From Macrostomum lignano (Eukaryota), in assembly GCA_002269645.1 (NCBI GenBank), contig NIVC01001966.1, positions 62,001 to 126,000 on the forward strand: a stretch of 64,000 nucleotides of DNA, read 5' to 3'. The notes below the pieces were generated by a model. The model was given only the letters and a program-made list of their open reading frames with translations. It made no database searches and was not told the DNA's origin. This document shows positions 24,911 to 27,871 of this stretch, one piece after another. Position 1 is the first letter of the stretch. Each line of letters starts with the position of its first letter. A program made the position numbers and the translations under genes.

Positions 24911-24977
24911 TGGCCCAGAGTATCTAGCTATCGGCATGCACATATTTACGCACTGTACTTCAATGCATGCGCCAGAC

Positions 24978-25660
24978 ATGGAGATCGAAGAGGGCGAGCC
25001 GGTCCAGCTGACTCAGCATGCGCTGTTCGATCTGATCCAGCGCGGCAGCTACAGGGCGATGATCGACGCCCTGGACAACCGATCGCGCACCCGCCGGAGG
25101 TGATCGCCCAGCTGATGTCCGGTCGCAGCGAGCTGGGCAAGTCGCCACTGGACACGGCAGTCTTCATGTGTCGCCAGGAGATCGTCAAGGACCTCGTGTT
25201 GAACCGCGGCGCCGACGTGAATGCCACCAACGCAGAAGGCTACACGGCGATGCACCTGGCCGCGGCCTGGCGCAACGCCGAAGCCTTGAAGATCATCTAC
25301 GCCCAGGGCGGCGACATCCAGCGCTGCAGCCGGTTCGGCGAGCGTCCCATCGAGGTGGCTCAGCGCTACGGCAACTCCGAGTGCGTCGACTTCCTTCAGT
25401 GGGCGGAGGCCCGCGACGCGTTCGCCGCCGCAATCCGGCAGATGCGGGAGACGCTGGCGGACACGGAGAAGCTGCAGGGCCGGCTGAACAAGGACGAGAG
25501 AAAGCAGGCGGACCTGGCCTGCACGGAGCGCGAGCAGTGGCTGCAGGGGGCGCAGGACGCCACAACGCAGAATTTCATAGCCATGCGGCTGGAGCTGGAG
25601 GACCAGTTTGCTCCGATCTACATCAAGCTGAGCGAGCCGCTGCCGGAGAAGACAAAGTGA
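24978..25660 (+). CDS. ANKRD45: Ankyrin repeat domain-containing protein 45-like, intronless, with one -1 frameshift near 25080
   Basis: ATG at 24978 gives MEIEEGEPVQLTQHALFDL...DN, then shifts frame to HPPEVIAQLM...GKSPLDTA...GYTAMHLAAAW...RFGERPIEVAQRYGNSECVDFLQWAEAR...KLQGRLNKDE...EQWL...RLELED.FAPIYIKL. This matches the ANKRD45 ankyrin repeats and C-terminal helical region. Confidence 0.78.
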
Positions 25661-25839
25661 TGGACTTGATGCCTGCTAATTGCTAAGTTGAATAAGTTGG
25701 CCCGCTCTCCGCACTGCAGGCGTCTATACAGTGTATACATGTGCATGAATTTGGTGAAATATTGTTATTAAACTACAGCCATCATTTTATTCCTCAATCA
25801 TAGGCTTACTGTTCTAATTCCTAGATACCTAATGATTCC

Positions 25840-25965
25840 CGGATCCCTAATGACTCCCAGATCCCAATTATTACTCCCAGATCCCTAATATGTCTCCCAG
25901 ATCCCTAATATAACTCCCAGATCCCAAATATCCCTCCTAGACCCCAAATACCCATACCAGATCCT
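25840..25965. repeat. Short degenerate tandem repeat (CCCAGATCCCTAATAT variants)
   Basis: About 5-6 units downstream of ANKRD45. Confidence 0.6.
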
Positions 25966-26329
25966 CAACCAGAGAGTGCACATTGCTAACAAAGATTGAT
26001 GTAGGAGTAATTAAACTTTTTACGGTTAACATTAATGAACAACTGACCAAAATCGAAAATTAAAAAAATATCTTTTTTACAACAGGTTTAGCGTTTTGCT
26101 TTATTTTTTATTCCTTATTTTTGCTTAGAATTGCATAAATTCTAAGGCCCGAAAGCCCATTGAGAGACGCGTGAATCAAACGAAGTTTTTCAGTCCTTTG
26201 GATAGGGATTAGGTTTCCTTTTTTAGCTTTCTCTTTTATAATTTAGAATCAGAAAAACAGCTGCTTTTGTGCAGGTAGTTCAAGTATAATCTCAACTCAA
26301 GCTCTCGGGGTTTTCATATCGTTGCTTCT

Positions 26330-26935
26330 GACACCTTGGCATTCCATTCTTTCCCCTGACATCCCGCACTGTCTCTTCTCTGGCACTCCATTCTTTCCCC
26401 TGACATCCCGCACTGTCTCTTCTCTGACACTCCATTCTTTCCCCTGACATCCCGCACTGTCTCTTCTCTGACACTCCATTCTTTCCCCTGACATCCCGCA
26501 CTGTCTCTTCTCTGACACTCCATTCTTTCCCCTGAGATCCCGCACTGTCTCTTCTCTGGCACTCCATTCTTTCCCCTGACATCCCGCACTGTCTCTTCTC
26601 TGGCACTCCATTCTTTCCCCTGACATCCCGCACTGTCTCTTCTCTGACACTCCATTCTTTCCCCTGACATCCCGCACTGTCTCTTCTCTGGCACTCCATT
26701 CTTTCCCCTGACATCCCGCACTGTCTCTTCTCTGGCACTCCATTCTTTCCACTGACATCCCGCACTGTCTCTTCTCTGGCACTCCATTCTTTCCCCTGAC
26801 ATCCCGCACTGTCTCTTCTCTGGCACTCCATTCTTTCCCCTGACATCCCGCACTGTCTCTTCTCTGACACTCCATTCTTTCCCCTGAGATCCCGCACTGT
26901 CTCTTCTCTGGCACTCCATTCTTTCCCCTGACACC
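26330..26935. repeat. 44-bp minisatellite (CACTCCATTCTTTCCCCTGACATCCCGCACTGTCTCTTCTCTGG)
   Basis: About 14 near-identical tandem copies with no unique spacers. Confidence 0.95.
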
Positions 26936-27253
26936 GCATTATTTTCTCTGACAATTCAATCTTTCCTCTAAGACTTTATTCTTTACTTTGACATTCCTCT
27001 CTCTCTCTCTTTCTCTCTCTGACAGTCCATTCTTTCCCATGACACTCTGTGCTCTCTTCCGTCTGATGCAGATGTCTTGCTTGACTTTCATTCGATCCTT
27101 CTTCCCTTTGTAATTCCCGTAATACTCGCATACTGTGGACCTGCTAATTCCCCAATCGGCTTACCACATTCACCCGCTAATCGCTTTGATTGCTGATGAC
27201 GCCAAAGTTTTGGTTTTGAATGCATGCGGCAGTCGCGCCCACTCGAGTGAACA

Positions 27254-27871
27254 ATGTCGGGTACCGCAGGCGCCCTAGAAGCTGCCGGCAGCTTCCTAGT
27301 GAACACGTGCGGCCAGATTGAGAGCGCAGAGATTCCGCACTACGATTACATCTTCATCATGTACCAGTTCGTGCACGGAGAGGACTGGGAGCGGGTGCTG
27401 GGACTTGAGGAGGCCGTGTCGCAGCTGTCCAGCAAGTCAGACGATGTCAGAGGCCTGCACAACTTTGCTATGCCAGTTGATGTCACCTGGAAGGCCACCA
27501 ATCCGCACGGTTGGCCCCAGCTGGTGATCACGGCGCTTGGCACAGACGTGTGGGGCACGCAGGTGGTCAGGGGCTACGCTGTGTGCCACCTGCCCATGCA
27601 GGCGGGCCGTTGCGTCAAACGGATCCCGCTGTTTGCGCCACAGTCTTCGTCGTTGTTCAGCTCAATCCAGGGCTTCCTGCAGAGCGACCAGCCGCACTAC
27701 ACGGACCCGAAGATACTCGGCCAAGGCCAGGGCCGCCAGGTGACCCGGGTGCGCAGTCTGGGTCACGTCAATTTGACTTTTAACACCTGTCTGAAAAATC
27801 TGAGGACTCTGGGCTACCAGACAACCAGCGCAGAGGTCGGAGCTGCTGTCACCTCGTCAGGCATCGTGTGA
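27254..27871 (+). CDS. B9D1: B9 domain-containing protein 1 (ciliary transition-zone MKS module), intronless, 205 aa
   Basis: Collinear with B9D1: FLV...GQIESAE, FVHGEDW...GLEE.VSQ..SKS.DVR, PVDVTWKATNPHGWPQLV, DVWG..VVRGY, YTDPKILGQGQGRQVTRVRS.G.V.L.FN. Confidence 0.92.
   Translation: MSGTAGALEAAGSFLVNTCGQIESAEIPHYDYIFIMYQFVHGEDWERVLGLEEAVSQLSSKSDDVRGLHNFAMPVDVTWKATNPHGWPQLVITALGTDVWGTQVVRGYAVCHLPMQAGRCVKRIPLFAPQSSSLFSSIQGFLQSDQPHYTDPKILGQGQGRQVTRVRSLGHVNLTFNTCLKNLRTLGYQTTSAEVGAAVTSSGIV

What the first reader, a model, noticed from the sequence alone, without database searches (positions are those of the whole stretch)
24962..27256. The same 14-nt motif AATGCATGCG(C/G)CAG precedes both intronless genes ANKRD45 and B9D1: a candidate shared trans-splice acceptor / operon signal
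AATGCATGCGCCAG (24962-24975) ends 2 nt before the ANKRD45 ATG, and AATGCATGCGGCAG (27219-27232) ends 21 nt before the B9D1 ATG: 13 of 14 bases are identical. Both end in CAG, contain UGCAUG (the RBFOX-binding word), and have no obvious upstream donor or X-box. Flatworms use spliced-leader trans-splicing and have operon-like clusters (established). The inference is that TTC6-ANKRD45-B9D1 is a polycistronic ciliary unit resolved at a shared, possibly RBFOX-regulated, acceptor motif.
Basis: partly seen in the sequence, partly recalled or inferred. Interest (0 to 1): 0.75.

Follow-up and report, generated by a model that had tools for sequence, protein, structure and literature searches.

The report
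Spliced-leader bases polished into reference genome
The shared 14-base "motif" marks two ordinary flatworm trans-splice sites where the last five bases of the spliced leader RNA were most likely written into the reference genome during RNA-seq-based polishing, so it is not a new regulatory signal.

Summary
AATGCATGCGCCAG (24962-24975) and AATGCATGCGGCAG (27219-27232) sit 2 and 21 nt before the ANKRD45 and B9D1 start codons, and they are the only copies in the window.

The window is Macrostomum lignano assembly Mlig_3_7. The central GCATG equals the last 5 nt of the M. lignano spliced leader (…TTATTGCATG).

A second assembly copy of the locus (L002) reads GAATTTCAG|CGGCAG upstream of B9D1. That is a canonical YTNCAG trans-splice acceptor exactly where the window reads GAATGCATG|CGGCAG. 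A third copy (L003) reads AATTCATG|CGCCAG at ANKRD45. An intron-containing B9D1 paralog carries TATTGCATG immediately before its annotated transcript start in all four of its copies.

Mlig_3_7 was polished with Pilon using RNA-seq reads. The best explanation is therefore two ordinary SL acceptors, native AATT(N)CAG|CG(C/G)CAG.

The UGCAUG/RBFOX idea falls away. Trans-splicing of both genes, and an ANKRD45-B9D1 transcription unit, are indirectly supported. Whether TTC6 belongs to that unit is untested.

Biological novelty is low. The practical point is that acceptors in this reference can be corrupted.

The parts
24962..24964 (+). AAT: native outron bases -8 to -6 upstream of the ANKRD45 trans-splice junction
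   Evidence: Identical in all three assembly copies.
24965..24969 (+). GCATG: the last 5 nt of the M. lignano spliced leader, occupying the place of the native acceptor T-N-C-A-G. Inferred to be an RNA-seq polishing imprint.
   Evidence: The SL ends ...TTATTGCATG. Copy L003 reads TCATG here, with T at -5 as in the YTNCAG consensus. The annotated 5'-partial CDS starts at 24971, so the model's transcript starts at 24969-24971.
24970..24977 (+). CGCCAGAC: the first 8 nt of the mature ANKRD45 mRNA after the leader (5' UTR).
   Evidence: The SL AUG opens an out-of-frame 14-codon uORF, MRQTWRSKRASRSS*.
24978..25660 (+). ANKRD45 coding region, intronless. The window copy has a 1-nt deletion at 25078 (CC versus CCC in the other copies).
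27219..27221 (+). AAT: native outron bases -8 to -6 upstream of the B9D1 junction
   Evidence: Identical in the window, L002 and L003.
27222..27226 (+). GCATG: the spliced-leader 3' end in place of native TTCAG. Inferred polishing imprint.
   Evidence: L002 reads GAATTTCAG|CGGCAG. This 4-nt block, GCAT versus TTCA at 27222-27225, is one of only two differences found between 27063 and 27381.
27227..27253 (+). CGGCAGTCGCGCCCACTCGAGTGAACA: the 27-nt B9D1 5' UTR after the leader
   Evidence: The SL AUG opens an 8-codon uORF, MRQSRPLE*.
27254..27871 (+). B9D1 coding region, 205 aa, intronless
   Evidence: PF07162 and named homologs.
23763..23887 (+).
   Evidence: The acceptor cattgcag|CCCTGC is canonical.
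24341..24909 (.). 23-bp TTAGGG-like tandem array filling most of the TPR gene-ANKRD45 gap
26337..26933 (.). 44-bp tandem array in the ANKRD45-B9D1 gap

Best explanation
The two 14-mers are the spliced-leader (SL) trans-splice junctions of ANKRD45 and B9D1 in Macrostomum lignano, as represented in the Mlig_3_7 reference. In the animal's DNA the sequence is most likely AATT(N)CAG|CG(C/G)CAG. That is a standard YTNCAG acceptor followed by the first bases of the mature mRNA. The 35-nt leader, which ends ...UUGCAUG, is joined at the first CAG (24969|24970 and 27226|27227), not at the second CAG. Mlig_3_7 was polished with Pilon using RNA-seq reads as well as DNA reads. Reads that still carried a few leader bases at their 5' end would have been laid over the end of the outron, and where RNA coverage won the vote the last 4-5 outron bases were rewritten to the leader's GCATG. 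The identical core of the motif, including its 'UGCAUG', is therefore leader sequence and not a genomic signal. What is shown: the leader identity, the native acceptor in one copy, the graded 4-nt versus 5-nt replacement, and the RNA-seq polishing in the published methods. What is inferred: that polishing caused the replacement, that the native ANKRD45 acceptor is TTNCAG, and that both genes are really trans-spliced at these points. ANKRD45 and B9D1 probably belong to one transcription unit resolved by trans-splicing.
For: (1) The window is NIVC01001966.1:62001-126000 of GCA_002269645.1, the M. lignano Mlig_3_7 assembly. (2) The SL is CGGTCTCTTACTGCGAAGACTCAATTTATTGCATG and the acceptor consensus is [T/C]TNCAG (PMC8629364). 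(3) The duplicate locus L002 reads TTTTGGTTTTGAATTTCAG|CGGCAG where the window reads ...GAATGCATG|CGGCAG. The 4-nt block is one of only two differences between 27063 and 27381. It turns a textbook acceptor into the leader's last 6 nt. (4) The third copy, L003, reads AATTCATG|CGCCAG at ANKRD45, a 4-nt replacement that leaves the consensus T at -5. L003 reads GCATG at B9D1. (5) An independent gene, the intron-containing B9D1 paralog Mlig008595g1, has TATTGCATG directly before a 5'-partial CDS that starts 2 nt later, in all four assembly copies. (6) The annotated 5'-partial ANKRD45 models start 1, 5 and 17 nt after the inferred junction and never upstream of it. [quoted passage not shown] STAR was run with --alignEndsType EndToEnd for transcript mapping (PMC5730564). 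(8) The L002 B9D1 copy that keeps the native acceptor has an intact ORF but no protein in the GenBank-derived cluster. That fits low RNA support, and hence no imprint, on that copy. (9) Operon: the locus tags Mlig000887g1 (ANKRD45) and g2 (B9D1) share a transcriptional-unit prefix. The gaps are 1,082 and 1,566 nt, or about 513 and 823 nt after subtracting the tandem arrays. Both are under the 1-kb criterion.
Against: No raw DNA or RNA reads could be inspected, so neither the native ANKRD45 bases nor the SL-containing reads were seen directly. The B9D1 difference follows the copy phylogeny: the window and L003 are sister copies and L002 is the outlier. A natural change in one lineage is therefore not excluded by tree logic alone. 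The three annotated ANKRD45 starts differ, so they bound the junction but do not pin it. The published methods do not say which STAR mode was used for the polishing step itself. After the leader bases are removed, the two sites still agree at 7 of 8 unconstrained positions (AA upstream, CG.CAG downstream). I calculate about 4e-4 for that by chance, and the artefact does not explain it. Only three genes could be examined, so how widespread the imprint is across the assembly is unknown.
Confidence: 0.8

Rival explanations
1. The leader bases are really in the DNA. A reverse-transcribed, trans-spliced mRNA converted or replaced the gene (retrogene or cDNA-mediated gene conversion) and left a relic of the leader's 3' end, as reported for dinoflagellate genes.
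For: ANKRD45 and B9D1 are intronless here, while the B9D1 paralog has introns. The GCATG/TTCAG split at B9D1 follows the copy phylogeny. PMC8629364 notes a locus where a full SL sequence abuts a protein-coding gene in the assembly.
Against: Leader identity stops after 5-6 nt. The upstream flank is collinear and identical between the native and 'converted' copies right up to position -6. A cDNA would carry 35 leader bases, and nothing would end the conversion tract after 5 of them. The intron-containing paralog shows the same thing. The 4-nt versus 5-nt grading between near-identical copies fits read coverage, not recombination. It would also destroy the AG needed for the trans-splicing that the annotation implies.
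Confidence: 0.07
2. The 14-mer is a native, shared trans-splice acceptor ending in CAG, possibly bound by RBFOX through UGCAUG, and it resolves a TTC6-ANKRD45-B9D1 operon.
For: The motif is exact and unique to the two gene starts. The organism trans-splices and has operons. Both motifs end in CAG.
Against: UGCAUG is missing from L002 at B9D1 and from L003 at ANKRD45. GCGCCAG and GCGGCAG have G, not T, at -5 and no pyrimidine tract, whereas TTTCAG with a T-rich tract lies 6 nt upstream in L002. The ANKRD45 models in the window and in L003 include bases upstream of 24976. A leader imprint would sit at 24971-24975 if the junction were at 24976, and it does not.
Confidence: 0.04
3. The motif is a promoter or transcription-factor site near the start of each gene, for example an NRF1/EWG-like GCGCATGCGC half-palindrome on the opposite strand.
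For: The reverse complement CTGGCGCATGCATT contains GCGCATGC. The annotated transcript models begin within or next to the motif.
Against: Only 8 of 10 and 7 of 10 bases fit the NRF1 palindrome (recalled from my own knowledge of the consensus). The central bases differ between assembly copies. There is no third occurrence at other gene starts in 64 kb.
Confidence: 0.03
4. Pure coincidence between two unrelated upstream sequences.
Against: 0.01 hits expected. The leader identity, the native acceptor in L002 and the same leader suffix at a third gene give a specific cause.
Confidence: 0.02

Closest known systems
M. lignano SL trans-splice acceptor sites ([T/C]TNCAG; Ustyantsev & Berezikov 2021, PMC8629364)
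   Same: The native form seen in L002 (TTTCAG|exon, with a T-rich tract upstream) fits the consensus. The gene order, strand and repeat-adjusted spacing fit that paper's operon criterion.
   Different: In the reference sequence of the window the acceptor AG is missing and leader bases stand in its place.
Reference-polishing artefacts: short reads forced end-to-end over a boundary they do not belong to, with Pilon then following the majority
   Same: Pilon with RNA-seq input is documented for this assembly. The change is confined to the 4-5 bases next to the junction, it varies between near-identical copies, and it equals the sequence carried by the reads.
   Different: I found no published description of this particular leader imprint. 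The cause is inferred, not observed in pile-ups.
Relic spliced leaders upstream of dinoflagellate genes (recycled cDNAs; recalled from the literature, not checked here)
   Same: Leader-derived sequence lies in the genome sequence directly 5' of a trans-spliced gene.
   Different: Those relics are long and often tandem, and they lie upstream of a functional AG. Here only 4-5 nt are involved, the AG is destroyed, and the flank is otherwise untouched.
RBFOX (U)GCAUG splicing-regulator elements
   Same: The hexamer UGCAUG is present in the motif as read.
   Different: The hexamer is the constant 3' end of the leader, so it is on every trans-spliced mRNA. It is not conserved in the DNA copies, and no RBFOX dependence is implied.

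Membership tests
SL trans-splice acceptor (M. lignano) | AG immediately 5' of the first exon base, in a [T/C]TNCAG context with a pyrimidine-rich tract | tested here: met
   Met in the native copy L002 for B9D1 (TTTTGGTTTTGAATTTCAG|CGGCAG). Partly visible for ANKRD45 in L003 (T at -5 and -6). In the window itself the AG is replaced by TG.
   GCGCCAG and GCGGCAG have G at -5 and no pyrimidine tract. Annotated models include bases upstream of 24976.
SL trans-splice acceptor (M. lignano) | RNA reads carrying the 35-nt leader joined to the exon at this base | not testable with these tools
   No read data were available. The evidence is indirect: the leader's last 5 nt in an RNA-seq-polished assembly and 5'-partial gene models starting just after it.
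Operon as defined in PMC8629364 | Adjacent genes on the same strand, with a repeat-adjusted intergenic distance under 1 kb | tested here: met
   All genes are on the + strand. The gaps are 1,082 and 1,566 nt, or about 513 and 823 nt after subtracting the tandem arrays.
Operon as defined in PMC8629364 | Genes cut from one transcriptional unit, with the downstream gene trans-spliced | tested here: inconclusive
   ANKRD45 and B9D1 are Mlig000887g1 and g2 on one contig. By the naming rule, a shared prefix means the same unit or the same cluster of units. The locus tag of the TPR gene was not obtained, and no RT-PCR or read evidence was available.
RBFOX-binding element | UGCAUG encoded in the pre-mRNA and conserved between gene copies | tested here: not met
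   L002 has TTTCAG at B9D1 and L003 has TTCATG at ANKRD45. The hexamer equals the leader's 3' end.
Relic SL / retrogene | A leader-derived tract longer than a few bases, with loss of flank homology at the insertion point | tested here: not met
   Leader identity ends after 5-6 nt at both window sites. At the paralog the exact suffix is 9 nt and identity over the last 20 nt is 12 of 20. The flank is identical to the native copy up to -6. An intron-containing paralog shows the same suffix.
X-box (RFX) ciliary promoter element near ANKRD45 or B9D1 | A match to GTTRCCATGGYAAC within the upstream regions | tested here: not met
   No hit with up to 3 mismatches between 23888 and 27254. The best hit in the window is at 33643, at the dynein-light-chain gene.

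The most novel reading that the evidence does not exclude
The GCATG is truly present in the animal's DNA. In that reading, mature trans-spliced mRNA would have templated a very short repair or conversion tract across the leader-exon junction in several genes. This would erase the acceptor in some copies and create heritable 'junction scars', a form of RNA-to-DNA information flow in a flatworm with hidden polyploidy.
Probability: 0.05. Interest if true: 0.7.

Novelty: not a real feature. Interest (0 to 1): 0.15.

Why it matters
There is no new biological signal here. The result is two ordinary trans-splice acceptors and a probable two-gene ciliary transcription unit, of a kind already described for this species.

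The practical consequence is more useful. In Mlig_3_7, the standard M. lignano reference, the bases immediately upstream of trans-spliced exons can be leader sequence rather than genome. Three effects follow:
- The acceptor AG is removed from the reference.
- False UGCAUG and ATG words are planted at gene starts.
- Motif discovery at trans-splice sites can be distorted. The published consensus was found at only 9,551 of 21,754 sites; I have not tested whether this is the reason.

It can also mislead promoter and 5' UTR design for transgenes, and any model trained on this sequence.

Tried and rejected
- **Transcript contigs:** I looked for contigs carrying the exact B9D1 or ANKRD45 proteins, to read the 5' ends directly. 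Only the genome contigs were on record.
- **P0002:** the ML2-derived B9D1 paralog entry has no contig on record. The paralog loci were reached through its cluster member P0036 instead.
- **RT ORF search:** I used the last protein search on a reverse-transcriptase ORF, hoping to sample many M. lignano loci. No M. lignano proteins came back.
- **Dynein-light-chain start:** I first read TTGCTATG|GCAACG at window 33652 as another leader imprint. I rejected that because it is a near-perfect X-box, GTTGCTATGGCAAC.
- **Other TTGCATG and TATTGCATG hits:** those in the window and in loci L004-L006 lie in AT-rich introns or in a retroelement with no exon after them. Their number is about what chance gives, roughly 8 expected against 5 seen for the 7-mer in the window.
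- **Automated scan for multi-base differences between copies:** it was swamped by microsatellites. The targeted alignments were used instead.
- **Cis-splice sites:** those of the G-alpha gene and of the TPR gene's last intron were checked for similar overwriting, and they are canonical.
- **Literature:** no paper mentioning Mlig000887 or this artefact was found.
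Full report
**The observation.** AATGCATGCGCCAG is at 24962-24975 and ends 2 nt before the ANKRD45 ATG. AATGCATGCGGCAG is at 27219-27232 and ends 21 nt before the B9D1 ATG. The degenerate pattern is expected 0.01 times in shuffles of the window, and none of 100 shuffles gave two hits. No further copy appears even with two mismatches. The 8-mer core has one other hit, inside a reverse-transcriptase ORF at 54946. There is no similarity between the two sites outside the 14 bases.

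**Where the window comes from.** The B9D1 protein is encoded, identically, on NIVC01001966.1 of GCA_002269645.1. The window equals bases 62001-126000 of that record. This is the Macrostomum lignano assembly Mlig_3_7. B9D1 is confirmed by PF07162 and by named homologs. ANKRD45 is confirmed by 42% identity to a protein named ANKRD45. I confirmed the upstream 2,067-aa gene only as a TPR protein. Its last exon ends at 23887, after a 5.2-kb intron filled with tandem repeats.

**The key comparison.**
- The M. lignano spliced leader is CGGTCTCTTACTGCGAAGACTCAATTTATTGCATG, and the published trans-splice acceptor consensus is [T/C]TNCAG (PMC8629364). The TGCATG inside the motif is therefore the last six bases of the leader.
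- The assembly holds two more copies of this locus: L002 (NIVC01000532.1) and L003 (NIVC01001471.1). Both are collinear with the window and differ from it by roughly 1-2% in the aligned single-copy segments.
- Upstream of B9D1, L002 reads TTTTGGTTTTGAATTTCAG|CGGCAGTCG, where the window and L003 read ...GAATGCATG|CGGCAGTCG. The block GCAT versus TTCA at 27222-27225 is one of only two differences between 27063 and 27381. It replaces a textbook acceptor, complete with its T-rich tract, by the leader's terminal bases.
- At ANKRD45, the window and L002 read AATGCATG|CGCCAG. L003 reads AATTCATG|CGCCAG, so only four leader bases are present there and the consensus T at -5 is retained.

**A third, independent gene.** B9D1 has a 73%-identical paralog (Mlig008595g1) that contains introns and is present on four contigs. 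All four copies read ...AAAAATATATTGCATG|CCAATTTTCAAGCC. The annotated 5'-partial CDS begins 2 nt after the bar. A 9-nt exact leader suffix at a fixed position has a chance probability of about 4e-6. The T-rich part may be native pyrimidine tract, so here too as few as five bases may have been replaced.

**Where the transcripts start.**
- The GenBank ANKRD45 models are 5'-partial, so the first codon sits within two bases of the model's 5' end.
- The CDS starts are at 24971 in the window, at the equivalent of 24975 in L003, and at the equivalent of 24987 in L002.
- None reaches upstream of 24969|24970. The starts bound the junction but do not fix it to the base.

**The cause.**
- Wudarski et al. 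2017 state that the Canu assembly 'was polished with Pilon v. [quoted passage not shown] 2.5.2b'. They also state that RNA-seq was mapped with --alignEndsType EndToEnd for transcript assembly (PMC5730564).
- Reads from trans-spliced mRNAs that retain a few leader bases cannot be spliced to the genome. Mapped end to end, they lay those bases over the end of the outron. Where RNA depth outweighs DNA depth, Pilon would change the reference.
- This mechanism accounts for four things. The change is confined to 4-5 bases next to the junction. The new bases are exactly GCATG. Near-identical copies differ (5, 5 and 4 bases at ANKRD45; 5, 5 and 0 at B9D1). An intron-containing gene shows it too.
- The L002 B9D1 copy that kept its acceptor has an intact ORF, but no protein from it appears in the GenBank-derived cluster. 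That fits few RNA reads being assigned to that copy.
- I could not inspect reads, so the causal step is inference.

**What the pre-mRNA most likely looks like.**
- ANKRD45: ...ACTTCAATT(N)CAG|CGCCAGAC-AUG.
- B9D1: ...UUUUGGUUUUGAAUUUCAG|CGGCAG...-AUG.
- After trans-splicing, the leader's own AUG opens short upstream ORFs: MRQTWRSKRASRSS*, which overlaps the ANKRD45 start, and MRQSRPLE*, which ends 3 nt before the B9D1 start.
They might serve as minor alternative acceptors, but they lack the T at -5 and a pyrimidine tract.

**Operon question.**
- All three genes are on the + strand.
- The gaps from stop codon to junction are 1,082 nt and 1,566 nt. After removing the arrays found by Tandem Repeats Finder, they are about 513 and 823 nt. 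Both are under the 1-kb repeat-adjusted threshold that Ustyantsev and Berezikov used.
- On one contig, ANKRD45 and B9D1 are named Mlig000887g1 and g2. In that annotation the prefix denotes a transcriptional unit, or a cluster of near-identical units, that the TBONE pipeline cut at trans-splice and poly(A) signals.
- An ANKRD45-B9D1 unit is therefore reasonably supported. ANKRD45 being g1 suggests that the TPR gene was assembled as a separate unit. The authors do note that units tend to break in repeat-rich gaps.
- No X-box lies upstream of either gene.

**What remains unexplained.** With the leader bases set aside and the acceptor consensus discounted, the sites still share AA at -8 and -7 and 5 of 6 bases at +1 to +6. 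I calculate about 4e-4 for 7 of 8 positions at a fixed register. The paralog's exon start (CCAATT) does not share this. I regard it as probably chance. A tandem-acceptor arrangement or a small duplicated cassette cannot be excluded.

**Rivals.**
- A real DNA relic of the leader, from cDNA-mediated conversion or retroposition, is the most interesting alternative. It draws some support from the genes being intronless and from the B9D1 difference following the copy tree.
- Against it: a conversion tract that stops after five non-homologous bases, three times independently. One of those cases is in an intron-bearing gene. It would also destroy the acceptor of genes annotated as trans-spliced. The documented RNA-seq polishing is a much less strained explanation.
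- A native RBFOX-linked acceptor, an NRF1-like promoter word and pure chance are each contradicted by the copy-to-copy differences and by the leader identity.

**Verdict.** The pattern is real in the file, but as a 14-base genomic motif it is not a real feature. Its invariant core is spliced-leader sequence, most likely introduced by polishing. What lies beneath is two ordinary acceptors of a kind already described for this species. Interest for biology is low. The caution about using Mlig_3_7 sequence at trans-splice sites is worth passing on.

Noticed in passing
window 33643-33656 (also L002 about 18451 and L003 about 15881): GTTGCTATGGCAAC is a near-perfect X-box (RFX site), with 1 mismatch to GTTRCCATGGYAAC. 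It overlaps the ATG and the annotated 5'-partial CDS start (33652) of a dynein-light-chain gene (PF01221). It is identical in all three assembly copies, and TATAAAAG lies about 60 nt upstream. It is a candidate RFX-driven ciliary promoter in this gene neighbourhood.
   Followed up: partly
window 25078: The window copy of ANKRD45 lacks one C (AACCGATC versus AACCCGATC in L002 and L003). This shifts the frame after codon 33, and the GenBank CDS (24971-25660) therefore reads the N-terminus in the wrong frame. It is either an uncorrected long-read error or a broken copy.
   Followed up: partly
L004-L007 (B9D1 paralog Mlig008595g1) versus window 27254-27871: M. lignano has two B9D1 lineages at 73% protein identity. 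The window's copy is intronless. The paralog spans about 1.3 kb for 204 aa, so it has introns. The window's lineage may be an old retrocopy or may have lost its introns.
   Followed up: partly
L002 12123-12740: The L002 copy of B9D1 is an intact 205-aa ORF with 3 amino-acid changes and keeps the native TTTCAG acceptor. No protein from it appears in the GenBank-derived cluster, so annotation differs between the duplicated copies.
   Followed up: partly
window 1680-1691: The start codon of the TPR gene (TTC6-like) is preceded by ...GGTCGTCATG|CGACT-ATG. This is again CATG followed by CG, 5 nt upstream of the ATG. It could be a 4-nt leader imprint or chance (CATG is frequent). No second copy of this region was available.
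   Followed up: no
window 24341-24909, 26337-26933, 18530-19590, 20260-23680, 29945-30715, 31450-32760: Long tandem arrays fill introns and intergenic gaps: 23-bp TTAGGG-like, 44-bp, about 20-bp GAGTCTGAGTGCTTGCT-like, about 76-bp, (TCTA)n and (GTCT)n. Many translate into spurious long ORFs.
   Followed up: no
window 43621-46512 (+): Coiled-coil exons with a weak, sub-threshold Tektin match (PF03148, E = 0.002). Together with the TPR gene, ANKRD45, B9D1 and the dynein light chain, this makes the neighbourhood look rich in cilium-related genes.
   Followed up: partly
window 51588-57000 (+): A non-LTR retrotransposon with endonuclease and reverse-transcriptase ORFs (PF00078 and PF14529 in homologs). 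It is broken into several frames and is not annotated as protein in GenBank.
   Followed up: partly
window 29335-31184 (+): A G-alpha (Gi/o-like) gene with canonical GT..AG around a (TCTA)n-filled intron and a CCAAT-like box about 150 nt upstream. It is absent from the called-gene lists of all three copies.
   Followed up: no
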